A stretch of 64,000 bases of DNA from IMG/VR virus record IMGVR_UViG_3300027985_000843, positions 62,001 to 126,000 of that record; one strand, 5' to 3'. The first letter of the stretch is position 1; each line of letters starts with the position of its first letter. The notes beneath the pieces are model-generated. The model was not told where the DNA came from. It saw only the letters and a list, made by a program, of their open reading frames with translations, and ran no database searches. Shown here in pieces: positions 2,032 to 36,643 of this stretch. The translations under genes were made by a program, and so were the position numbers.

Positions 2032-3153
2032 TCACACGGTCGGCTCAAACCGAACCATGACCTCGGGTGGGATGGGCATACCCAGCACGTAGTGGGCGAA
2101 CGTCTCAGCGAAGTCCTCCCCCACGCCCGTCTTGGCGTACTGACTCACCGTGACGGTGTTGTTGTCCCCGATGAACACGTACTTCCGACCGGGCCGAACG
2201 AAGTTCCGTTCGAGCCACATCTCCCCTCGCTTGTATGCTGCGGTAGCATCCTTCTGCGACATCCCCGAGCCTGAGAAGGTATCCTTGAAGTATTCGATCA
2301 AGGGGACGTTCGGGTCCTTGAGGAACCCCACGGCCTTCGCAGGAGAGAAGTCCCCTCGAACAAGAGCCTGCCACATGTCCTGACGCGCCTCAAGAGTGAT
2401 ACCCTCTCCCTTGGAGTAGTTGTCCTCGTAGGCGTCTCTCTGGGGCCCTGAGAGCTTCTTGTGCCAGTAGCGGTGTCCAAGCTCGTGGACGAAGGTGTGG
2501 ACGTCGCTGAAGCGGAACCTAGCCTCCGCATTGAGCAAGACTATGTCGGGCGACTCCTTGTACATGCCCGCCCAGCTCTTCCGGCCCTTGTCCTCGGACC
2601 CACCGACGAGATAGACATCCCCGTACAGAATGCTACCGAAGCCCTTGGACTGTATCTTGCTCGAAGCGTCATCCAACAGCTTCATGGCCTCCGCATACTC
2701 TTCCGGGCGGTAGCCGAACTTGTTGATGATCTTGAACGGCCCGTGCTGGAAGTCCTTCTCGACCGTCCGATACGAGTCGAGGCGGTCCTGGACCCTCACG
2801 AGGGACTTGAGGGAATCCTCGATGCTTTCGAGCTGGATCGAAATCCAGGAAACAGCATCTTGTGTGGGGCCGCTCAGGTTCTTCTCAGCGAACGGATACT
2901 TGAGACGATGCAACCACTGAAGGACGCTCTTCATCTTCCGTTGCTCGTCCTTGCGCTCGAATCGAACACCATCGAGCATGGTCGCAAGAGGGCTCAGCTG
3001 CTCGCCCATCTTCCGGAACAGTTCGACGGCCCCCTCGGGGTCCTCTCGCAACTTCCGCTCGATCTGCGGGGCCATCTTCCGGAACAGCTGGACGTAGTCC
3101 TTGACCTTCGCGGCCAGGATGTATCGAGCTACGACCTTTCGGACGTCCGTCAT
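2032..3153 (-). CDS. Zincin-like metallopeptidase domain protein with N-terminal KVVARY motif
   Basis: HELGH (2473..2487) and downstream YAKT..GEDFAE (EDFAE at 2104..2118). ATG 3153 overlaps the upstream TGA (ATGA). Confidence 0.8.
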   Translation of the reverse strand: MTDVRKVVARYILAAKVKDYVQLFRKMAPQIERKLREDPEGAVELFRKMGEQLSPLATMLDGVRFERKDEQRKMKSVLQWLHRLKYPFAEKNLSGPTQDAVSWISIQLESIEDSLKSLVRVQDRLDSYRTVEKDFQHGPFKIINKFGYRPEEYAEAMKLLDDASSKIQSKGFGSILYGDVYLVGGSEDKGRKSWAGMYKESPDIVLLNAEARFRFSDVHTFVHELGHRYWHKKLSGPQRDAYEDNYSKGEGITLEARQDMWQALVRGDFSPAKAVGFLKDPNVPLIEYFKDTFSGSGMSQKDATAAYKRGEMWLERNFVRPGRKYVFIGDNNTVTVSQYAKTGVGEDFAETFAHYVLGMPIPPEVMVRFEPTV

Positions 3154-6100
3154 CGCTGGCCCCTGTTCGCCAAGTAGCGGGCGATGACGCGAGCCATCCG
3201 GATCTCTCCCGGGATGGTCACGTTGAGCCACTTGCGAATTTGGGGGAGGACCGTTCGAGGGCCGTAGGCGACCAGCATGCCGACAGCCTCACAGAACGCC
3301 TCCTCAGAGTTCTTGTTGGCGTACCCTGTGATGGGGTTGTTGGGGGTAGGCATTGTCGTGGTGCCCTCTTCCAACAGATCCTCGAAGTCTTGCTTCTTGG
3401 CAAGCTCTCGGTGGCGGCCGGCGTAGCCGGGCCACACAGCGTCGAGCTGGAGAGACAGAACGGGGTCCTTGTCCGCCAGGTACTCGGCGAACTCGTAGGA
3501 CCACATGTCCCCGGGCCACTTCGCGAGAAGCTCCCGGATGTCGAGGTCACCGTAATCCCCGTAGATGGCCTCCGACCAATAGTCCTTGGCTCCCCCGCCC
3601 AACAACTTCCACAGGTGGTGGCCCATCTCATGGGCCATCGTCTTGACGAGCTTGTCAGGGTTGCTGCTGACAGCTGCGGAGGCGTAGATCGTGATGGTCC
3701 CGTCGTGGTTGTATCGACCGCCTTCCCCGATCGTGGCTTCGAACTCGAAGATCATCGGGAGCTGATTCTTTGCCATCCACGGCATCCGCTCTGCGGACCT
3801 CTTGCGGAACAGCTTGAGGGCCTCCTTGAGCATCGCCATCTCTTCGGCGTTGTAGCGATCGTTCTGCTTGTAACCCCGGACTTCGATCCTGAAGCCCTCC
3901 AAGATGACTTGCTCTCGACCTGGAACCTCAGCCTGCAACGTCGCGGGCTCGTCGGGGTCCTTGTATCGGCGGTTGTTCGGGTCTTCATAGTAGTCGATGG
4001 CCTCCCGCACCGCTTTCCAGAACACCTGAGCCTTCCGCCTGATTCGCTTCTCCCACGCCTTGACATCCTGCTGGTACCGGCTGAATCGAACCGTCTCAGG
4101 CATGAAGTCCGTAGCCCTGTCGATGGGCAAGTCGGCTTCGATGTAGAAGTCCCATCCGGACTTGCGAAGCATGTAGTCGATGTTCTTGCGGACGTTTTCC
4201 TTGATCCGCTCATCGTACTTGAGCGACTTGTTCAAGAAGCGCTCGAACATCAGGTCGGCGAACCGCTTGCCCCACACATTGAAGGCTTCCTTGAGCCGGA
4301 TGGCCGTATCATAGTCCTTGACGCGAGGGACGTTCTTCATGAGGGTGAGGAAGTCAGCCCTCATCTTGTCGACCCATGGTTGATCGATCTGGACCAGCTC
4401 GGTTGCGTATCGAGCCACAACACGATTGACGAGGGAGGCCGCGAACGGAACCGGCTCGTAGTCCTCATCGGGGGTTACTTTGCAAGTCGGGCACGCCTGG
4501 CACACGTCGTCAGCCCGCTCTTTGAGCTGCTTGAGTCTACGCTTCTCCTTGGTCGCCCGTTCCTGTTCCTTGTACCAAGCATCCTCGTACTTGTCTTGGC
4601 CGGTCTCACACTTGCGCTCCAACCGTATTTGCTTCTGACGCTCACGCTCCATTTGGGCGATCTCTCGATCGGCGTTTTCCTGGAGCCACGCGTCATTCTC
4701 GTAGGGATGCTCCTCGATGTACTCCATGAACTGCTCGGCCCGTTCATCGGGGGTGCCTTTGAACTGGTTTTTGAGCTTGTTCCACAGGCCGTGATACTCG
4801 GACGGAATATTGTACTGTGCCCGCTCGTCTCGTTCCCTCCGACGTTCCCAGCCCCTCTGTTGTGGCGACAGCGCAATCCGGTCGGCCGACTTGTCCAGCC
4901 GATGCATGACCGTGCCGTCTTTCATGTACGTGTCTTCGAGGCCCGGGACAAGGTACTGACTCCGAAGCGTGGAAGCCTCGTGCCCGACAGCGGCAGCCGT
5001 TTCCTCCAGGGCCTTCTTGAACTCCTCCTTGAGGACGGCCTGCCGTTCCTTCGCGTCCGTGGGGAGCTTGCCCTTGCGGACAGCCTTGAGGCGCCGCTTC
5101 ATTTCCTCGTTGGCGTGCAGTCCCCGGATGTCTTTCGCCGTGATGTCGAACTTCTGAAGGTACGCATTGATCTTGGTCGCGTCGATCTTGCCTGTGTCAT
5201 GGCAGAACAGGCAGTCTTCGCCTTCCACGGCCTCGTAGGCATCCCGCAACGCCTTGACCAACGCTGCGCTGCTGACCGTTTTCTTCTGCTTGACGCCGGA
5301 CTTGCCAACGTAGGTGACCGTCGCCTTGCCTCGACCGAAGCTGACGTGATTCTTTTGCCAGCCGGTGACCCCGAAGTGACCATCCTTCGCTGAAGTGTCG
5401 TTGCCAACCCGCTCATACGTCTCGTCGATCAGCCCCACGGCCAGTGCCGTGAGGAACTTGTTCGGGTCGGAGGACTTGAGGTCCTTCGCCACCTGGGCCC
5501 GCAAGCCGTCGATGCTCTTGCGGAGCTTCTCGACGCGCTTCGCCTTCTCTCGGTTGCGGTGTTGGACCTGCCCTTCACTGTACTCGTAGACGGTCGTGGT
5601 TCCCTCACCGTCCTGCTTCGGAACCTGCTTCTTGTTCTTGTATCGAGCCGCCGTCCGCTTCTCCCGCTCGACCGGCTTGCCGTCGATGAGAATCTCGTGC
5701 GTCCGGTCAGCCCCATCGCCATCGACACCCGCGATGGCTTCACCGTCGACGTCGATGGAGGTCGAGTGGCCCACATCCCCAAGATACTTGATCTCGGCAA
5801 GCACCTTCTCGATGGCCTTGAGAGTGTCGCCCTCCACATCCACCTCGATAGTGTGGCGAGCCGCTTCCAGGTACCGGGCCACCACGCGTGTGGGGCCGTC
5901 TCCCCCGGGCCCATTCTCCCCGCACTCCCCCGTCTCGGGGCAGCGGTAGGCATCCCGGCCGTCGTCATAGATGGGCTCAGAGGGGCACTCAAGCAGGTCA
6001 GGGCCCGTTTGGCTAGGCAGGTCCCACAGGTGAGCCGCGACGACCCTGGTGGCCCCTCCTAGGGCCTCCAGGGCCGAGGTCACGCCGGGGATGACATCCA

Positions 6101-6425
6101 TGGCCGAGACCTCGCGAATGGGGACCCACTGATACTCGGACGATTCGTAGTTGAGCGTGGGCTCACCCTCCGAGTCGAACGTGTGGAAGTAGGTGACCGT
6201 CGCCGTGGGCATGTTGAGCGTGATGACCTTGGTCAGGTAGTTGACTGCGAGCCCCGCCTCTTCTTGCGTCTCCCGGATGGCCGCCTCCACCACGGCCTCG
6301 TCATCTTCGACACCACCCGTCGGGAAGTTCCACTTGCCGGGCATCCACGGAGCCGTAGGGCCTCGCTTGAGCAGCAGGACAGAGTCGCCTCGTTGAATGA
6401 TGGTGGCTGCAACGGTCTTGGTCAT
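3150..6425 (-). CDS. Multidomain fusion (1091 aa): Nudix hydrolase + unknown domain + DNA topoisomerase IB core + coiled coil + zincin metallopeptidase
   Basis: Nudix box GGVEDDEAVVEAAIRETQEEAGL; Topo IB motifs ERVGN, GKSG, AKDIR, VGH, SQYL; HEMGH (3618..3632) and YANKNSEEAFCE. ATG 6425 in ATGA overlap. Confidence 0.85.
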   Translation of the reverse strand: MTKTVAATIIQRGDSVLLLKRGPTAPWMPGKWNFPTGGVEDDEAVVEAAIRETQEEAGLAVNYLTKVITLNMPTATVTYFHTFDSEGEPTLNYESSEYQWVPIREVSAMDVIPGVTSALEALGGATRVVAAHLWDLPSQTGPDLLECPSEPIYDDGRDAYRCPETGECGENGPGGDGPTRVVARYLEAARHTIEVDVEGDTLKAIEKVLAEIKYLGDVGHSTSIDVDGEAIAGVDGDGADRTHEILIDGKPVEREKRTAARYKNKKQVPKQDGEGTTTVYEYSEGQVQHRNREKAKRVEKLRKSIDGLRAQVAKDLKSSDPNKFLTALAVGLIDETYERVGNDTSAKDGHFGVTGWQKNHVSFGRGKATVTYVGKSGVKQKKTVSSAALVKALRDAYEAVEGEDCLFCHDTGKIDATKINAYLQKFDITAKDIRGLHANEEMKRRLKAVRKGKLPTDAKERQAVLKEEFKKALEETAAAVGHEASTLRSQYLVPGLEDTYMKDGTVMHRLDKSADRIALSPQQRGWERRRERDERAQYNIPSEYHGLWNKLKNQFKGTPDERAEQFMEYIEEHPYENDAWLQENADREIAQMERERQKQIRLERKCETGQDKYEDAWYKEQERATKEKRRLKQLKERADDVCQACPTCKVTPDEDYEPVPFAASLVNRVVARYATELVQIDQPWVDKMRADFLTLMKNVPRVKDYDTAIRLKEAFNVWGKRFADLMFERFLNKSLKYDERIKENVRKNIDYMLRKSGWDFYIEADLPIDRATDFMPETVRFSRYQQDVKAWEKRIRRKAQVFWKAVREAIDYYEDPNNRRYKDPDEPATLQAEVPGREQVILEGFRIEVRGYKQNDRYNAEEMAMLKEALKLFRKRSAERMPWMAKNQLPMIFEFEATIGEGGRYNHDGTITIYASAAVSSNPDKLVKTMAHEMGHHLWKLLGGGAKDYWSEAIYGDYGDLDIRELLAKWPGDMWSYEFAEYLADKDPVLSLQLDAVWPGYAGRHRELAKKQDFEDLLEEGTTTMPTPNNPITGYANKNSEEAFCEAVGMLVAYGPRTVLPQIRKWLNVTIPGEIRMARVIARYLANRGQR

Positions 6426-7786
6426 TGTGCTTTTCCGTGAAGGTAGCGGTGCACCACCTGGAAGGCCAGCTTGGAGACAGGCTTGCCGCCAAATCCCGAG
6501 AGCCACAAGGTGCGACGCATCCGGTACAGAGCGTTGGGCGGCAACTTCTCTGGTGAAACCATGAACAAGACGAAGGTGTCGGCGAAGTCCTCTTTCTCGT
6601 CCGTGGTTCCATATTCGGTCGGAATCTGCAATTGCTCGTAGAGAGCCTTCAGAGCTTCCCCTACCTCAGGGTTCTCCCGCCGAAGAAGGTTGACCGTGTC
6701 GGGGGCGATGCGGAGTCCTGAGGAGTACCCCAGGCCCAAGATCTTCTTCTTGTGAGCAACCACCCTCTCCACTGTGCGATCGAAGTCAGGATCGTCTGGG
6801 GAATAGCCGTAGTTCGTTTTTACATAGAGCTGTGGATTCCGGATGACGTCGAAGAGTTGCTGCCCTCGCTTGGTGAGCCGAAATTGATTCGCCGCGATGA
6901 GCGGGTCACCCATCCCAGGGTCTCGAAGCCAGTAGGCAAATTTGACTTTGTCGAGCCCCTTGAGGCGGCGGGCCGTCTTGGCGGGGTTGAAGTCGTCTTT
7001 TTCGAGCAACGCGTAGTAGCGTTCCAGTTCGTTGGGCTTGATCTGATCCAACAAGCTTCGTGTGTCGTGGATGGGGTCCCAAGCACCGTCCCAGAACTCT
7101 CGGGCTTCTCCCTTGATGTAGGTCATGTGCACGAAGTGACCGAACTCGTGCATGAACGACCCCATAATCCACGATCCTGTTCCGAGCATCCGGTGGGGAC
7201 CGTCCTCGGTGAACATGGTCTTGCCCAACACGATGGTTTGCGCGTGCGAAACGTAAAGAGCGCCAGCATCATCCGTGTCCTGAAGGACAACTTTCTTGAC
7301 TCCTTCCTGGAGGAGTTCCGGCACACCGCGCTTCTTGAAGGTAGCCCGCAGAAAGTCGATCGCATCAAACAGCTTTTGCAGCCGCTTGGGCCCAAGACGG
7401 AACTGATCCGTGACTGGAAAGCCCTTGTACTGGAACTGGGCCGGCCCGATCTGGCCCAAGAACTGTTGGAGGGTCTGCTCGAACCGGTCGAGTTGGCCCA
7501 ACAGCTCCTGGTAGTCCTCCGGTTTTTGGTTGTCTGACAACGCCAAGAGAACGGGGCCTCTCGGCCGCATCGCGTCCAGAGTGGCCTCAGCGTCTCCACC
7601 GAAAGCCAGCAAAACCCAGTCAATGAAGCCCTTTTGCGTTGTGAGCATCAGGGCGTTGGGGGCGAACGTGTAGCGATCGAACACGTCCTTAGCCTGAGGA
7701 GTACCGAGGCGCACGGCCCGCACTTCTTGGGCAGCCCTCTGGAATGCTTCCAGATCCTTCTTGGCCTCTTCCCACTCTCGGGTCAT
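6422..7786 (-). CDS. Zincin-like metallopeptidase domain protein with C-terminal QVVHRYL motif
   Basis: GALY..., HEFGH (7136..7150), YGTTDEKEDFADTF. Confidence 0.8.
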   Translation of the reverse strand: MTREWEEAKKDLEAFQRAAQEVRAVRLGTPQAKDVFDRYTFAPNALMLTTQKGFIDWVLLAFGGDAEATLDAMRPRGPVLLALSDNQKPEDYQELLGQLDRFEQTLQQFLGQIGPAQFQYKGFPVTDQFRLGPKRLQKLFDAIDFLRATFKKRGVPELLQEGVKKVVLQDTDDAGALYVSHAQTIVLGKTMFTEDGPHRMLGTGSWIMGSFMHEFGHFVHMTYIKGEAREFWDGAWDPIHDTRSLLDQIKPNELERYYALLEKDDFNPAKTARRLKGLDKVKFAYWLRDPGMGDPLIAANQFRLTKRGQQLFDVIRNPQLYVKTNYGYSPDDPDFDRTVERVVAHKKKILGLGYSSGLRIAPDTVNLLRRENPEVGEALKALYEQLQIPTEYGTTDEKEDFADTFVLFMVSPEKLPPNALYRMRRTLWLSGFGGKPVSKLAFQVVHRYLHGKAQ

Positions 7787-8205
7787 CGTGCCGCCGCTCC
7801 TGCCACTTGGGCGAGGTTCTTGCCCATCGCCACGCGGGCCTTCTCTTTGGCGTACTGCTCCTGGCGGGCAGTTGCCTTGATCCGCAAGGTCTGTAAGTCC
7901 TTGCCCCGTTGGGTACCGAAAGGCGTGACGCTAATACCACGGTACGGCTTCTTTTCCTCCTGGAACGCGTCGTAGTCTCGCTGGTACCGCGCACTCAGCT
8001 CCTCAGCCTCTTGGCGGAGAGACTCCAAGCTCTTTGGGTCCGTTCCCGTACCCCAGCACTGAACACACAGGTGTTTGACTTGAGCCGTCTTCTCCACGTG
8101 GACACCCTCTCCCCCACAATGCTTGCAAGGGTCCAGCCGCACAGGAGGAACATTGAGCATTCGGGCCGCGTACCGGGCCACTACTCGGAAGAGAAGGTCA
8201 TGCAT
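7783..8205 (-). CDS. DnaJ-type zinc-finger plus coiled-coil protein with N-terminal RVVARY motif
   Basis: CKHCGGEG and CVQCWGTG (CxxCxGxG). ATG 8205 preceded by GGGAAGGTG. Confidence 0.7.
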   Translation of the reverse strand: MHDLLFRVVARYAARMLNVPPVRLDPCKHCGGEGVHVEKTAQVKHLCVQCWGTGTDPKSLESLRQEAEELSARYQRDYDAFQEEKKPYRGISVTPFGTQRGKDLQTLRIKATARQEQYAKEKARVAMGKNLAQVAGAAAR

Positions 8206-8264: not shown

Positions 8265-9272
8265 TCACTGAAGAAGGCGCCACTTCAGATAGCGAAGACG
8301 ATCCCTGATCGACAGCTTGCTGCCGTACTTCTTGCCCGTCAGCTCATAGTGTTCGACCACTCGACGAATCAGCGTGTGGGGCTGAGGGTCTTTGGGGTCG
8401 AGCTTGCCGGCGAAGCCCGCTGCCTTCGTGTGGCCTCCCCCGCCGTGGACCTTGGCGAAGCTGGCACAGTCGAAGAACGTGTGGCTGCGAGTCGAAAAGA
8501 CGATCGAGGGCTCCCCGTCGATCATGAAGATGTTGAAGCCGACCAGCAGGTCCACGTTGGTGTCCAGATACTCGGCCGTGTCGCTGGTCAGCTTGACTCC
8601 CTCGATGACCGCAACGCGAGTGCCGCTGGACGTAGTGAACCGCCACGCATCGTCGCCCTTCTTCTTCGCTGTCTTGAGCTTGCGTTCGAGAAGGATGGGG
8701 CCGATCTCCAGCTTGGCGTCCAGATCGCGCAAGGACTTGTGCGAATCCCACGGCCAGAAGTCGATGGCCTCGGAGACCTCTCGGGCCTCGTGCCATCTCT
8801 CGTGCTTGTTCTGCCAAGTGTCTCTGATGCCGATGAGGGTTGCGAAGTCTTGGATCTTGTCGATGTCGGGGGTGTTGGGAACCGTCTTGCCGTAGCTCTC
8901 CATGAGCGGCTTGAAGACCTCTCTGAACACGAGCAGGGCCCCGCATACGCCTGGATCTTTCTTCTCGTCGCCGAAGACGCCGTTCTCGCCGAAGGCTTCC
9001 ACGACTCCCTGTTGTGTCTTGTGGTGGTCCAGCACGACAGCCCCCATGCCGATGAAGTCGTCGACCTGATCCTCGTGTGGAGAGAAGTCCGCGAAGATGG
9101 TGCCGGGTTCCACCGGTAGCGTCTGATGTTGCCTCGTCTTGTACTGCACGAAGGACACCTTCGCGTTCGGCAGGCAGTGCTTCAGCAGAAGCGCACTCGC
9201 GGTGCCGTCGGAGCAGTTGTCGTGGACCACGATGTGGTTGATGTGGCTAATCTTGTCGAGCGGGATAGGCAT
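8265..9272 (-). CDS. DHH/DHHA1 family phosphoesterase (NrnA/NrnB-like)
   Basis: HDNCSDG, DFS, LDHH, GGGGHTKAAGF motifs. Confidence 0.9.
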   Translation of the reverse strand: MPIPLDKISHINHIVVHDNCSDGTASALLLKHCLPNAKVSFVQYKTRQHQTLPVEPGTIFADFSPHEDQVDDFIGMGAVVLDHHKTQQGVVEAFGENGVFGDEKKDPGVCGALLVFREVFKPLMESYGKTVPNTPDIDKIQDFATLIGIRDTWQNKHERWHEAREVSEAIDFWPWDSHKSLRDLDAKLEIGPILLERKLKTAKKKGDDAWRFTTSSGTRVAVIEGVKLTSDTAEYLDTNVDLLVGFNIFMIDGEPSIVFSTRSHTFFDCASFAKVHGGGGHTKAAGFAGKLDPKDPQPHTLIRRVVEHYELTGKKYGSKLSIRDRLRYLKWRLLQ

Positions 9273-9970
9273 CAGCTTACTCCAAGAGTTCGTTGCTTGG
9301 CTCGGATCGTGTCGAACACCGAGTTGCGCAGTTTGGGGTCAAGAATCTTGTCGAGGGCCGTTCGGTTCTCGGCGTACCACTCCGACAGTTCCGAGTGGCT
9401 CGTCATGTTGTTGATCTTGACGATGTATGCTTTGACGAAGTCGTATTCGTGAACAGCCGTAGGCTGAAGCTGCTCGAAGGACTTCGCGGTGTCACTCTTG
9501 GTGGCGTCTGAAACTTCCGAGACCTTCGAGGAGATTTCGAAGGTCTGCCGGCCCATGTCCAACGCTTGATCCAGGGCATTGCGTGCCTGGGTTGCTTGTT
9601 CGAGGTTGCCCCCGAAGTATCCGTCAAGGATGAGCCGCAAGGCGTCGAACGCCGCCATGAAGACGGTAAGCTGCGCCTGCGTCTTCATGTTCGGGATCTG
9701 CTCTGCCAGCATCCGGAGCATCTGCCGCTCTTGGGCGTTCTGTCCGAACTCGGGCATGGGAGGGCTGTCCGTCTTGCTCGACTGCTCACCCCGCATGGCA
9801 GCGAAGTCGAAGTCGGGGAACGCTCGTCTGAGCAGCTCCTCGCCTTCCTTCGAGCCCAGAAATCGCTCCGCGATGTTCTGGACTGCCTTGTTGTAAGCCT
9901 CTTCCCCTTGCGTGTGTTTGATTTTGAGAAGCTCGTCCGCTGTCTTTTTCAAGACATCTTCTAGTCCCAT
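9272..9970 (-). CDS. Hypothetical helical protein
   Basis: Start moved to ATG 9970 (TGATG overlap with the upstream gene). Confidence 0.7.
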   Translation of the reverse strand: MGLEDVLKKTADELLKIKHTQGEEAYNKAVQNIAERFLGSKEGEELLRRAFPDFDFAAMRGEQSSKTDSPPMPEFGQNAQERQMLRMLAEQIPNMKTQAQLTVFMAAFDALRLILDGYFGGNLEQATQARNALDQALDMGRQTFEISSKVSEVSDATKSDTAKSFEQLQPTAVHEYDFVKAYIVKINNMTSHSELSEWYAENRTALDKILDPKLRNSVFDTIRAKQRTLGVS

Positions 9971-10260
9971 CACGACCTCGGTTTGCTGGCGTTTTTGATG
10001 AGCCACGAGTGGTACCTGTCCGCTCGCTCCTCCGCATCAGTTACACCGAGACGCCGCAAACCCCCCTCGAAAATTCCTCGAACTAGCGCAGGTGCCGCAA
10101 CAGGATCCGACATCGTTCGCCAACACGGCATGCAGTAGTCGAGCTTGTCTGGAGGCTCCTGCCCTTGACTACTGATGGTTTGCTTTTCCTTCTCCGTGAG
10201 CGTTATCGTGTGGATGCTGGCCTCGTCGAAGTCTCTGTGGCACATGCAGCAAGTCACCAT
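9970..10260 (-). CDS. Small zinc-ribbon-like protein
   Basis: CCMC ... CMPC. Start reassigned to ATG 10260. Confidence 0.65.
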   Translation of the reverse strand: MVTCCMCHRDFDEASIHTITLTEKEKQTISSQGQEPPDKLDYCMPCWRTMSDPVAAPALVRGIFEGGLRRLGVTDAEERADRYHSWLIKNASKPRS

Positions 10261-34534: not shown

Positions 34535-35142
34535 GGGTTCCAGAAGCTGAAGGTCAGCGAGAAGTTCCAGTTGTGGTGCCAGCTGCCCCACGTCAAACCG
34601 TAGCCGCTGTAGGCCCCGAAGTTCTCCGTGAGGTCGATGCCCACCCCACCACCGATGCTGCGGTAGCCCAGGGCGGCATTGAGGTTGACCCAGTCGTAGT
34701 ACAGGAAGTCGGCCATGAAGCCCGCATCCGTCACATCGCGGAACTCTTGCGAGTCCCCATAGAGGGCTTCCAAGGGCAGCAACCCCATGTACGCCTTCGG
34801 CCGGAAGCGGAAGCCCCAGATCGGCGGCTTGTGCATCGCGGCGATCACGTGGACCTCACCCTCAGCCTTGACTTCGTAGTTGCACCAGGTCATCCGCAGA
34901 GTGTAGGGCTCCGGAGCATTCCCCGTGAAGAAGACTCGGCCGTCCCTGTCCACGACAATCCGGATGGGGTCCAGCTCGAACGTTGGCTTCTCGTCGAGCT
35001 GGCACTGCTTCTCCCGAAGCAACGTGGCGAAGACACGCATGTCCTTCTCGGGCACGCACATCGACGGCTCCGCACACTCTTGAGCCGACGCCACCGACGA
35101 CAATAGCAGGACCGCCAGAACGAACAGCCACCGGTGCATCAC
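34531..35142 (-). CDS. Secreted or outer-membrane protein (signal peptide, aromatic beta-strand C-terminus)
   Basis: MMHRWLFVLAVLLLSSVASA|QE signal; alternating strands ending NWNFSLTFSFWNP. Confidence 0.65.
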   Translation of the reverse strand: MMHRWLFVLAVLLLSSVASAQECAEPSMCVPEKDMRVFATLLREKQCQLDEKPTFELDPIRIVVDRDGRVFFTGNAPEPYTLRMTWCNYEVKAEGEVHVIAAMHKPPIWGFRFRPKAYMGLLPLEALYGDSQEFRDVTDAGFMADFLYYDWVNLNAALGYRSIGGGVGIDLTENFGAYSGYGLTWGSWHHNWNFSLTFSFWNP

Positions 35143-35888
35143 TGTCTCCTCTCCAGACGAGCTTTCAGCTCACGGGTGGCCGCCGCCAGCTCCTTGAGGT
35201 TCTGCGTCGAGCTGGGGCTGCCTTCGCCCGTGTTGATCCAGTTCCAGAAGTCGGGCGTCTCACACAGCTCGCACGAGGTCCCGGACTCCTTCCAGTCTTT
35301 CGACCCCCGCTCGTAACCCCACCCGAGCCCATAGTGGTGGGCAAGGGAGTTCATACACGCCTCACAGGCCGTAGCAGCCACGAGAATCGAGTCTTCAACC
35401 GACAGGGGCCGGAGGACCTTGCCATGCCTCAAGGCCGCTTCCTGGACCTCCTGGGACGACGGGCGAGCCATTGCGAGAGCGAGGTCTGTCGGCCAAGTCG
35501 ACTCGCCCGACAGGAGTGTGTAACTGCCGCTCGAATCCCACTTGTCCGGCCAAGGCTCGCCGATGTTCCGAACTTGTGTCCCTTTGCAACGTGCGCACTC
35601 CCGACCCTCTACCCCCTCGACCCACCCGTAAGTCTTGCGAAGGTCCTCTTCCGGATGAGGGCAGGTCGCAACCTCTTCGGGCAGAATCGTCCGAAGGATG
35701 GAATGCCGAAGGGACGCAGGCATCCGGTCGTGCTGGTAGATGTACCCAGGGGGAGGGACATGCCCGTCGCCGGTGCTGAAGTCGGGAATCCACCGCTCGC
35801 CCGCCTCGTTCTCGAACCACAGGGACGGGAGCAGCTGGAACCTCTGAGCGAGGCGGTAGCGAAAGACGATGCGAGCTGCGAGGTTCAT
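35139..35888 (-). CDS. Cys-rich hypothetical protein with N-terminal RIVFRY motif
   Basis: ATG 35888 in ATGA overlap; CPH, CARC, CEAC, CELC. Confidence 0.7.
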   Translation of the reverse strand: MNLAARIVFRYRLAQRFQLLPSLWFENEAGERWIPDFSTGDGHVPPPGYIYQHDRMPASLRHSILRTILPEEVATCPHPEEDLRKTYGWVEGVEGRECARCKGTQVRNIGEPWPDKWDSSGSYTLLSGESTWPTDLALAMARPSSQEVQEAALRHGKVLRPLSVEDSILVAATACEACMNSLAHHYGLGWGYERGSKDWKESGTSCELCETPDFWNWINTGEGSPSSTQNLKELAAATRELKARLERRQ

Positions 35889-36643
35889 AGAGAGCCCTCG
35901 ATGTCTGTCTGTTTGCGTTGCCAATACGCCTTAACACCGCGTGCAATACTGGCCTTGTGCTCTTCAGACAGTTCGCTCGGACCTTTACCCTTACGGCCTC
36001 TAGAGATTCGGGCCAGGGTTTCCGGAGTTCTCTTTCGACCCCTGTTTGCCGCAGCCACCTTTTCTACATGTTCAGGGGATAACTTCCGACCCACGCGAGC
36101 CGCAGCCATTTTGGCTTTGGTCTCCTCGGACAAGGGTTTTCCTTTGAGTGCTTCGGACACCTTTCTTCCGACCTCCGGATCTCTTTTCTTGCCCTTTTTG
36201 GCCTGAGACATTTTAGCTCTGGTCTCTGGGGATAGCTTCCTCCCTCTCAAGGCAGCGGCTACTTTGGCAACAGCTTCTGGCGACTTTTTTCGTCCTTTCA
36301 TGACTTTGGATAGCTTTTCCTTAGTCTCAGAACTCAGGGATTTACCACCCAAGCCCCCACTATCCAAGTTGTAGCCACGTGTCAGGTCGGTTGAGCTGTA
36401 GTGCTTGATCCAACGACGCTCTGCACAAAGGGCGTCGTCCTCTGTGTCGAATTCTTCCAGCACTTCCACCACGAAATTGTCGATGCCGTGCTTTCTCATG
36501 GCTCTGACAATCAACATATGGTGATGACTTCTTTTGGAAGCACTCACGTGCTGAGCCCATCGATGGCTCATATGGTTGGTCTTGCCCACATAGACCTTAC
36601 CATTCACAAGATTCTTGATGAGGTACACGCACGGCCGTTTCAT
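35885..36643 (-). mobile_element. Free-standing GIY-YIG homing endonuclease with tandem NUMOD3 repeats
   Basis: VYLIKN..NGKVYVGKT, R...H, E, GYNL..GG; about eight 17-aa K(L/R)S.E...K.S.A..G repeats; lower GC (31/60 in line 36241). Confidence 0.9.

What the first reader, a model, noticed from the sequence alone, without database searches (positions are those of the whole stretch)
3150..6425. Nudix - unknown - topoisomerase IB - coiled coil - metallopeptidase fusion, segmented by the tag
Seen: one 1091-aa ORF holds an intact Nudix box (~6425-6050), an acidic Cys spacer, a small unknown domain (~5865-5660), a Topo IB core (~5640-4885), a charged coiled coil with CQACPTC, and a HEMGH zincin (~4400-3195). 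Each junction carries a tag copy or variant (RVVAAHL, RVVARYL, RTAARY, SADRIAL, RVVARYA, RVIARYL). Known: the Topo IB catalytic pentad (vaccinia R130, K167, R223, H265, Y274) matches ERVGN, GKS, KDIR, VGH and SQY (Tyr codon 4953..4955). I know of no such fusion. Inference: a polyprotein cut into separate enzymes, or several small tagged genes fused by loss of stop codons. An injected Topo IB plus Nudix could relax the entering genome and destroy nucleotide alarm signals.
Basis: partly seen in the sequence, partly recalled or inferred. Interest (0 to 1): 0.85.

Follow-up and report, generated by a model that had tools for sequence, protein, structure and literature searches.

The report
Tag-jointed multi-enzyme protein of a jumbo phage
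A 372-kb uncultured phage encodes one 1091-residue protein that strings a Nudix hydrolase, a type IB topoisomerase and a zinc protease together, with the same short peptide tag at every joint; hundreds of related proteins shuffle the same modules at the same tag.

Summary
Window 3150..6425 (-) is one uninterrupted 1091-aa gene. It has a Nudix domain, a type IB topoisomerase with the full R-K-R-H-Y pentad (Tyr491 = nt 4953-4955), a helical charged module and a HEMGH...E zincin. Six copies of an RVVARY-like tag sit at the joints (5 regex matches against at most 1 in 20,000 shuffles).

AlphaFold gives confident separate domains, and every tag lies in a low-confidence linker (pTM 0.49).

The fusion is not unique. 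A search of 1.84 billion representative proteins gave 774 clusters at E<1e-30. In the best 150 (318-2952 aa), the Topo IB and zincin modules occur in any order, always bounded by the tag. One protein (59% identical) is Nudix-Topo-zincin.

In stand-alone relatives the tag sits about 5-6 residues after the Met, or about 3-5 residues before the stop. Related jumbo phages carry the modules as separate genes.

Relatives carry ART-PolyVal, poly(A)-polymerase-type nucleotidyltransferase (PolyA_pol), 2H phosphoesterase and SprT domains. I file the protein as a new variant of the phage "polyvalent proteins" of Iyer et al. 2017, which lists neither Topo IB nor a junction tag.

Fusion of tagged genes is supported. 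Cleavage at the tags and injection into the host are untested. I read the tag as a shared docking or addressing peptide that may also be the zincins' cut site.

The parts
3150..6425 (-). The 1091-aa gene (stop codon included)
   Evidence: ATGA overlaps with both neighbours
6060..6425 (-). MutT-like Nudix domain, aa 1-122; Nudix box at 6249-6317
   Evidence: Pfam NUDIX 3.2e-17; PDB and NCBIfam nearest are MutT/NudG/NudI/RppH; AF2 pLDDT 85-95
6027..6047 (-). Tag copy 1, RVVAAHL (aa 127-133)
   Evidence: in a pLDDT<50 linker
5889..6026 (-). Acidic, Gly/Pro-rich spacer with CPS...CPETGEC (aa 134-179)
   Evidence: its start is shared with P0079; pLDDT 25-31
5868..5888 (-). Tag copy 2, RVVARYL (aa 180-186)
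5658..5867 (-). Small domain of unknown function (aa 187-256)
   Evidence: 56-70% identical to segments of P0152 and P0014, where it is the C-terminal part of a roughly 180-aa tag-bounded module; no family match; the Atlas lead to the Topo IB N-domain is weak
4890..5657 (-). Type IB topoisomerase module (aa 257-512). It begins with tag copy 3, RTAARYK (5637-5657). Catalytic Tyr491 is at 4953-4955.
   Evidence: pentad at least 90% conserved in 23 relatives
4869..4889 (-). Tag copy 4, degenerate, SADRIAL (aa 513-519)
   Evidence: homologous position carries RVADRYL in P0152 and KIAALYQ in P0014
4425..4868 (-). Charged all-helical module ending in CQACPTC (4482-4502) and VPFAAS (aa 520-667)
   Evidence: 59-62% identical to modules of P0152 and P0014; also in P0010 and P0058; AF2 long helices, pLDDT 50-80
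4404..4424 (-). Tag copy 5, RVVARYA (aa 668-674)
3192..4403 (-). Gluzincin-type metallopeptidase module (aa 675-1078): HEMGH at 3618-3632, EEAFCEA at 3285-3305
   Evidence: HExxH and one Glu invariant in 51 homologues; AF2 pLDDT 92, pTM 0.85; only weak fold matches to M1/M61/LF/SprT zincins
3171..3191 (-). Tag copy 6, RVIARYL (aa 1079-1085), six residues before the stop
2032..3153 (-). Downstream gene, 373 aa: N-terminal tag KVVARYI (3118-3138) plus a second, unrelated zincin (HELGH 2473-2487, EDFAETF 2098-2118)
6422..7786 (-). Upstream gene, 454 aa: a third zincin (HEFGH 7136-7150, EDFADTF 6572-6592) with C-terminal tag QVVHRYL (6440-6460)
   Evidence: the module recurs in P0006, P0014, P0059, P0138 and P0145
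7783..8205 (-). First gene of the run, 140 aa: N-terminal tag RVVARYA (8167-8187) plus two CxxCxGxG DnaJ-type zinc-finger motifs
   Evidence: conserved with the same tag in L017
35139..35888 (-). Fifth tagged gene, 29 kb away: MNLAARIVFRYRLAQRF... plus a Cys-rich domain that is the first module of P0152

Best explanation
This is a genuine single gene of a 372-kb uncultured jumbo phage from a hydrothermal-vent metagenome. It belongs to the class of phage 'polyvalent proteins'. It is a beads-on-a-string chain of independently folding modules: a MutT-like Nudix hydrolase, a Cys/acidic spacer, a small unknown domain, a catalytically complete Topo IB, a charged helical module and a gluzincin protease. 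Each joint carries a conserved amphipathic tag of about 10 residues (h-A-x-R-V-A-A-R-Y/F-h) that lies in a flexible linker.

Shown: the chain arose by fusion and shuffling of genes that each carry the tag at an end. The same modules occur as separate tagged genes, or in other orders, in hundreds of related proteins.

Inferred: the tag is a shared docking or addressing peptide, read by one common partner of all tagged modules. Candidates for that partner are the tag-flanked zincins themselves or a capsid or scaffold surface. The working analogy is the T4 capsid-targeting sequence or an encapsulin cargo peptide. In fused proteins the same tag would also mark where the three zincins of this four-gene operon cut the chain. 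The freed enzymes would then act on nucleic acids and nucleotides: DNA relaxation by Topo IB, and NTP or RNA-5'-end pyrophosphohydrolysis by the Nudix.

The confidence of 0.55 is for the whole statement. I put the shown part (real gene, polyvalent class, fusion of tagged modules) near 0.9 and the inferred role of the tag near 0.4-0.5.
For: The ORF is intact and the domains are verified.

Full-length AF2: Nudix, Topo and zincin are each confident, pTM is only 0.49, and all six tags lie in or at the edge of segments with pLDDT<50. In the zincin-only model the fold scores pLDDT 92, while the N-terminal tag is below 50 and the C-terminal tag helix is about 70.

The family is large and shuffled: 774 representative clusters at E<1e-30, with Topo and zincin in any order in proteins of 318-2952 aa.

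The tag sits exactly at the N edge of every Topo module and at both edges of zincin modules. Adjacent modules share one tag.

There are 236 tags in 150 proteins against 0-3 in shuffles. 22% lie in the first 26 residues (expected 2.3%), most often 5-6 residues after Met. 11% lie in the last 32 residues, usually 3-5 residues before the stop.

The copies differ at synonymous codon positions.

Related phage loci have the modules as separate, ATGA-coupled genes.

Relatives carry ART-PolyVal (2e-42), PolyA_pol, 2H phosphoesterase, SprT-like, GNAT and HAD_SAK_1 domains. These match the polyvalent-protein concept, in which zincins are the hub and autoprocessing was proposed (PMC5512222).

62 of 94 relatives of 800 aa or more contain HExxH.

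The module is almost absent from cellular genomes: 2 MAG contigs among 185,579 species.
Against: No experiment or proteomic data exist. No cultured phage carries the zincin module.

Cleavage at the tags is not shown, and about a third of the long relatives have no HExxH in cis.

The gene's neighbours are DNA-metabolism genes (DHH phosphoesterase, Dam methylase, RNase HII, DNA polymerase) and not virion genes, so packaging and injection have no contextual support.

No tag receptor was identified.

The tool returns no model coordinates, so I could not see whether a tag docks in the zincin cleft.

The Topo-to-helical-module joint (4847-4866) is a contig break in the independent Logan assembly, and no other assembly carries it.
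Confidence: 0.55

Rival explanations
1. Pure polyprotein. The tag is only the scissile site of the zincins, and the protein is cut into six pieces, like an RNA-virus polyprotein whose protease is flanked by its own sites.
For: Zincin modules carry a tag on both flanks. There are three zincins in one four-gene operon. The tags lie in disordered linkers. Autoprocessing was proposed for polyvalent proteins.
Against: Stand-alone modules keep whole tags 5-6 residues from the N-terminus or 3-5 residues from the C-terminus, where cutting would release only a few residues. One third of long relatives lack HExxH.
Confidence: 0.25
2. Uncut multi-enzyme scaffold. The tags are docking helices that gather tagged proteins, fused or separate, on a common hub such as a replication or repair factory. 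The protein works intact inside the infected cell and is not injected.
For: Terminal tags occur on free-standing modules. The genomic context is DNA metabolism. The modules of relatives are nucleic-acid repair and processing enzymes.
Against: This gives no role for three tagged proteases. No hub was identified.
Confidence: 0.25
3. Chaperone handle. The tag has a hydrophobic core flanked by Arg, which resembles the published DnaK-binding pattern (from my own knowledge). It would recruit Hsp70/DnaJ to unfold or refold the modules, for example during passage through the tail.
For: The first gene of the operon pairs the tag with two DnaJ-type CxxCxGxG motifs, and this gene is conserved in L017.
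Against: The Pfam hit to the DnaJ zinc finger is below threshold (18.9 bits against 32.7). The tag is far more conserved than chaperone sites usually are. No test was possible.
Confidence: 0.08
4. Assembly artefact. Two related phage sequences were joined at a shared module boundary, or stop codons were lost through sequencing error.
For: Logan contigs of the source sample break at 4847-4866, right after tag 4. The 40-mer across that point is found only in the source contig.
Against: The two Logan contigs overlap by 20 identical bases, have equal depth (11.8 and 12.2) and show no differences from the window. The frame is kept. The tag-to-helical-module join also occurs in P0152 and P0014, and the Nudix-Topo-zincin order in P0001, from other samples.
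Confidence: 0.04

Closest known systems
Polyvalent proteins of phages and conjugative elements (Iyer, Burroughs, Anand, de Souza, Aravind 2017, PMC5512222)
   Same: Phage-encoded chains of unrelated enzymatic domains. The zincin-like metallopeptidase is the commonest hub. Architectures are shuffled. Relatives carry the signature ART-PolyVal domain.
   Different: That paper's text lists no Topo IB domain, no conserved junction peptide and no jumbo phages. There is no MuF, portal or lysozyme fusion here. The three zincins match no Pfam, NCBIfam or PHROG family.
Poxvirus and bacterial type IB topoisomerases (vaccinia Top1; D. radiodurans TopIB, PDB 2f4q)
   Same: Pfam catalytic core and the R-K-R-H-Y pentad. 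From my own knowledge, vaccinia Top1 is packaged in virions and aids early transcription.
   Different: Only the last hairpin of the N-terminal domain is present, preceded by tag plus KxKK. The domain is embedded in a multi-enzyme chain. Topo IB genes annotated in cultured jumbo phages (PaBG, Xanthomonas and Rhizobium phages) are only 25-31% identical.
T4 capsid-targeting sequence on internal proteins, and encapsulin cargo-loading peptides (from my own knowledge)
   Same: A short conserved peptide sits at the extreme end of otherwise unrelated proteins, joined by flexible linkers.
   Different: The sequence is unrelated. Here the peptide occurs at N-termini, at C-termini and internally. No link to a capsid or shell protein was shown.
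RNA-virus polyproteins with a protease flanked by its own cleavage sites (from my own knowledge)
   Same: The protease module is bracketed by the same short motif that separates the other modules.
   Different: This is a dsDNA phage with a metallopeptidase. Cleavage is not shown, and the modules also exist as separate genes.
'Swiss Army Knife' RNA-repair proteins (Pfam HAD_SAK_1 family description)
   Same: Relatives fuse HAD_SAK_1, 2H phosphoesterase and poly(A)-polymerase/CCA-type nucleotidyltransferase modules to the same Topo and zincin modules.
   Different: These modules are absent from the window's own protein.

Membership tests
Type IB topoisomerase | Catalytic core profile (Pfam PF01028) above the gathering score | tested here: met
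   80.6 bits against 23.7, aa 288-486
Type IB topoisomerase | Catalytic pentad Arg-Lys-Arg-His/Asn-Tyr | tested here: met
   The alignment to 2f4q puts ERVGN, GKSG, KDIRG, VGHE and SQY opposite frvgsd, gkhgv, kdfrt, lgn and gsy. The pentad is at least 90% conserved in 23 relatives.
Type IB topoisomerase | N-terminal beta-sheet DNA-binding domain | tested here: inconclusive
   Only the part equivalent to 2f4q residues 62 onward aligns. In relatives the module starts at the tag. The upstream small domain gave only a weak Atlas lead (0.62) to Top1B_N_bact.
Type IB topoisomerase | Relaxes supercoiled DNA through a 3'-phosphotyrosyl intermediate | not testable with these tools
   Needs a relaxation assay with a Y491F control.
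Nudix hydrolase | Nudix box GX5EX7REUXEEXGU and the domain profile | tested here: met
   Box at aa 37-59. PF00293 scores 63.2 bits against 21.1.
Nudix hydrolase | Assignment to a substrate subfamily | tested here: inconclusive
   Best NCBIfam hits are MutT, NudG, NudI and RppH, all far below their cut-offs. The PDB best hit is a MutT-related protein at 7.9e-9.
Zincin (gluzincin) metallopeptidase | HExxH helix plus a downstream Glu as third zinc ligand | tested here: met
   H277, E278, H281 and E387 are invariant in 51 sequences. The assignment of the third ligand is inferred from conservation.
Zincin (gluzincin) metallopeptidase | Match to a curated peptidase family or a solved zincin fold | tested here: inconclusive
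   Pfam gives only Peptidase_M64 at E 0.63. The PDB profile search found nothing. Foldseek best is E 7e-3, TM 0.22, to M1 aminopeptidases, with M61, LF and SprT lower.
Zincin (gluzincin) metallopeptidase | Proteolytic activity and its cleavage site | not testable with these tools
   Needs expression of wild type against the E933A mutant, with mass spectrometry.
Polyvalent proteins (Iyer et al. 2017) | Several unrelated enzymatic domains in one phage or plasmid polypeptide, with variable architectures among relatives | tested here: met
Polyvalent proteins (Iyer et al. 2017) | Zincin-like metallopeptidase as hub, and signature domains such as ART-PolyVal in the family network | tested here: met
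   Three zincins in the operon. ART-PolyVal in 3 of 24 relatives, best E 2.2e-42.
Polyvalent proteins (Iyer et al. 2017) | Packaged in the virion and delivered with the DNA | not testable with these tools
   The neighbours are DNA-metabolism genes and there is no MuF or portal fusion. Needs virion proteomics.
T4-type capsid-targeting sequence | Short N-terminal peptide shared by unrelated head-internal proteins and removed by the prohead protease | tested here: inconclusive
   The shared terminal peptide is met (52 N-terminal tags, mode 5-6 residues after Met). Head location and removal are untested. C-terminal and internal copies have no T4 counterpart.

The most novel reading that the evidence does not exclude
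Huge phages use one short peptide (h-A-x-R-V-A-A-R-Y/F-h) as a universal plug-and-play code. Any enzyme module that carries it, whether fused or free, is recognised by one machinery that loads it (into the capsid or a viral factory). Dedicated tag-flanked gluzincins cut it free. This would be a polyprotein and cargo-addressing system in dsDNA phages that explains how hundreds of shuffled effector chains stay functional.
Probability: 0.3. Interest if true: 0.85.

Novelty: new variant of a known kind. Interest (0 to 1): 0.62.

Why it matters
Polyvalent proteins are thought to be the toolkits that phages deploy at the start of infection. How their many domains are sorted, released and kept interchangeable is not known. 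A conserved joint that marks every module boundary across hundreds of protein clusters gives a concrete and testable handle. It predicts where processing or docking happens. It defines module borders for dozens of domains with no known function. It suggests a portable tag that could address any protein to the same phage machinery. It also adds Topo IB to the list of enzymes that phages distribute in this form, a parallel to the virion-packaged Topo IB of poxviruses.

Tried and rejected
- DNA-level repeat or recombination site: rejected. The tag copies differ at synonymous positions, and the repeat finder found no shared DNA unit at the tags.
- Internal translation starts at the tags: no consistent in-frame start codon precedes the internal tags.
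- Tat signal resemblance (RxFL): rejected by eye. There is no twin Arg and no hydrophobic stretch.
- Family assignment of the three zincins: Pfam, PHROGs and NCBIfam gave nothing usable. The PDB profile search found nothing.
- The three zincins are not recent paralogues. They share only the HExxH and E-D-F-A-E regions.
- Small unknown domain: one extra homologue only. The Atlas lead to the Topo IB N-domain scores too low to use. The AF2 model is low-confidence there.
- A first full-length alignment (A3) was misaligned and was replaced by the collinear A4.
- Literature search for the tag strings and for Topo IB in jumbo phages: no paper on the tag.
- Search for the Topo-to-helical joint in other assemblies: only the source contig has it.
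- One search used a mistyped pattern and means nothing.

Full report
**1. What is there**

The window is part of IMG/VR contig IMGVR_UViG_3300027985_000843, 371,739 bp. Runs holding the stretch are labelled hydrothermal vent metagenome. The window encodes a phage-type DNA polymerase, a helicase and tail-like proteins.

On the minus strand, 3150..6425 is one uninterrupted gene of 1091 codons. It is the third of four co-directional genes whose stops and starts overlap as ATGA at 7783-7786, 6422-6425 and 3150-3153.

**2. Domains**

- Nudix. Pfam places NUDIX at aa 4-106 (3.2e-17). The Nudix box is complete at aa 37-59. The nearest solved or curated relatives are MutT, NudG, NudI and RppH-type enzymes, all below family cut-offs.
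- Topo IB. Pfam places Topoisom_I at aa 288-486 (1.4e-22). The alignment to Deinococcus TopIB (2f4q) puts ERVGN, GKSG, KDIRG, VGHE and SQY opposite the catalytic Arg, Lys, Arg, Asn/His and Tyr.
- Zincin. The C-terminal 420 residues have HEMGH and a downstream EEAFCEA. In an alignment of 51 homologues, H, E, H and one Glu are invariant. AlphaFold models this module with pLDDT 92 and pTM 0.85. Foldseek finds only weak similarity to gluzincins (M1 and M61 aminopeptidases, lethal factor, SprT), best E 7e-3. No sequence profile in Pfam, PHROGs, NCBIfam or the PDB recognises it.
- Charged module. Residues 520-667 are predicted as long helices.
- Spacer and small domain. Residues 134-179 and 187-256 have few homologues and low model confidence.

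**3. The tag in this gene**

Six copies or variants lie at aa 127, 180, 257, 513, 668 and 1079. The pattern R[VIT][VIA]A[RA][YH] occurs five times. Only 54 of 20,000 shuffles of the protein had a single match and none had two.

The copies use different synonymous codons, so selection acts on the peptide.

In the full-length AlphaFold model the three enzymes are confident. The overall pTM is only 0.49. Every segment with pLDDT<50 (124-194, 215-260, 514-524, 646-672) contains or abuts a tag. The modules therefore look like independent beads joined by flexible, tag-bearing linkers.

The neighbours carry the tag too:
- The 140-aa first gene has it 6 residues after Met, followed by two DnaJ-type CxxCxGxG motifs.
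- The 454-aa gene is a second zincin (HEFGH) that ends in QVVHRYLHGKAQ.
- The 373-aa gene starts MTDVRKVVARYIL and is a third zincin (HELGH).

The three zincins resemble each other only around the metal ligands.

A fifth tagged gene lies at 35139-35888.

**4. Relatives**

A full HMMER search of 1.84 billion representative proteins gave 4849 hits at E<=1e-3 and 774 below 1e-30.

In the best 150 (318-2952 aa), the Topo module (query aa 256-515) and the zincin module (aa 665-1085) are sharply delimited. They occur alone, in either order and at any position.
- P0001 (59% identity, from a different metagenome) is Nudix-Topo-zincin without the two small modules.
- P0032 is Nudix-Topo.
- P0152 and P0014 contain the small domain and the helical module in other orders.

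Where the tag sits:
- The Topo module always begins with RVAA(R/K)(Y/F)KxKK.
- The zincin module has a tag on both sides, and adjacent modules share one tag.
- A position-weight scan finds 236 tags in the 150 proteins, against 0-3 after shuffling.
- 52 tags sit at N-termini, most often 5-6 residues after Met. 27 sit at C-termini, usually 3-5 residues before the stop.

In 13 related jumbo-phage loci the zincin is usually a separate 416-473-aa gene beginning M-x(3-5)-tag. Topo IB lies in ORFs of 386-1272 codons with other partners, such as a HAD_SAK_1 phosphatase. The zincin can be fused to a poly(A)-polymerase-type nucleotidyltransferase.

Pfam domains in 24 giant relatives include PolyA_pol (11), ART-PolyVal (3, best 2e-42), 2H phosphoesterase, SprT-like, GNAT and DUF3990.

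The zincin module is missing from cultured phages. It is found in one uncultured 485-kb phage and in only two MAG contigs among 185,579 reference genomes.

**5. Interpretation**

The family fits the 'polyvalent proteins' of Iyer et al. 2017. These are phage proteins that combine many conflict-related enzymes, with zincin-like peptidases as the commonest hub and proposed autoprocessing. That paper lists neither Topo IB nor a junction peptide. Topo IB genes have been noted in some jumbo phages as ordinary genes.

The comparative data show that this gene is a fusion of tagged modules.

What the tag does is inference. Protease modules bracketed by the tag, and tags sitting in flexible linkers, argue for cleavage. 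Complete tags at fixed distances from the ends of free-standing modules argue for a docking or addressing role, because a bare cut site would be pointless there.

I therefore favour a shared docking peptide that may double as the zincins' recognition site. The rivals are in the fields above.

Injection with the DNA is possible by analogy. It is not supported by gene context, which is DNA metabolism: DHH phosphoesterase, Dam methylase, RNase HII and DNA polymerase.

**6. Assembly check**

Logan contigs from the source sample match 2900-6700 without a single difference or gap and with equal depth (11.8 and 12.2). They end and restart at 4847-4866, directly after the fourth tag. The 40-mer across that point occurs only in the source contig. 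Raw reads were not available. A chimeric join there is unlikely but not excluded.

**7. Verdict**

The feature is a new variant (Topo IB, three unclassified zincins, a conserved junction tag) of a known kind (phage polyvalent proteins). It is of clear interest because the tag makes processing and addressing directly testable.

Noticed in passing
window 35139-35888 (-): A fifth tagged gene lies far from the cluster. It starts MNLAARIVFRYRLAQRF (a double tag) and continues as a Cys-rich domain homologous to the first module of P0152. It sits next to a GIY-YIG homing endonuclease gene (35885-36643).
   Followed up: partly
window 4847-4866: The independent Logan assembly of the source sample breaks its contigs here, immediately after the degenerate fourth tag. 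Depth is equal on both sides. The cause could be strain-level module variation or a coverage gap.
   Followed up: partly
window 7783-8205 (-): The tagged 140-aa protein has two CxxCxGxG motifs of the DnaJ zinc-finger type. It is conserved, with the same N-terminal tag, upstream of P0001 in L017 (4165-4590).
   Followed up: partly
window 2992-3040, 3058-3106, 3783-3831, 4248-4296: A helical motif (..LFRKM.. / ..LKEA(F/L)..(W/F)(G/R)KR..) is repeated, twice in the downstream zincin gene and twice in the C-terminal zincin module (direct-repeat family D1).
   Followed up: no
relatives P0020, P0029, P0053, P0064, P0075, P0130 and others; L012 12792-16559; L009 4165-5727: After many Topo modules comes a conserved basic-then-acidic stretch, ATKSxAEKEDEE...P-KKKPPRxDLRR...D-rich...LSLNYK, which ends in a tag. 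The window's protein lacks it.
   Followed up: no
L017 6001-8520 (P0001): After its zincin and tag, the closest relative carries the first roughly 35 residues of a second zincin module and then a stop. This looks like the remnant of a module duplication or a recombination at the tag. In L017 a DRAT-type ADP-ribosyltransferase gene takes the place of the window's 454-aa zincin.
   Followed up: partly
window 8265-9272 (-) and 9272-10006 (-): A DHH phosphoesterase and a 244-aa unknown protein lie upstream of the tagged cluster. They keep that position in related jumbo-phage loci L003, L006 and L007.
   Followed up: no
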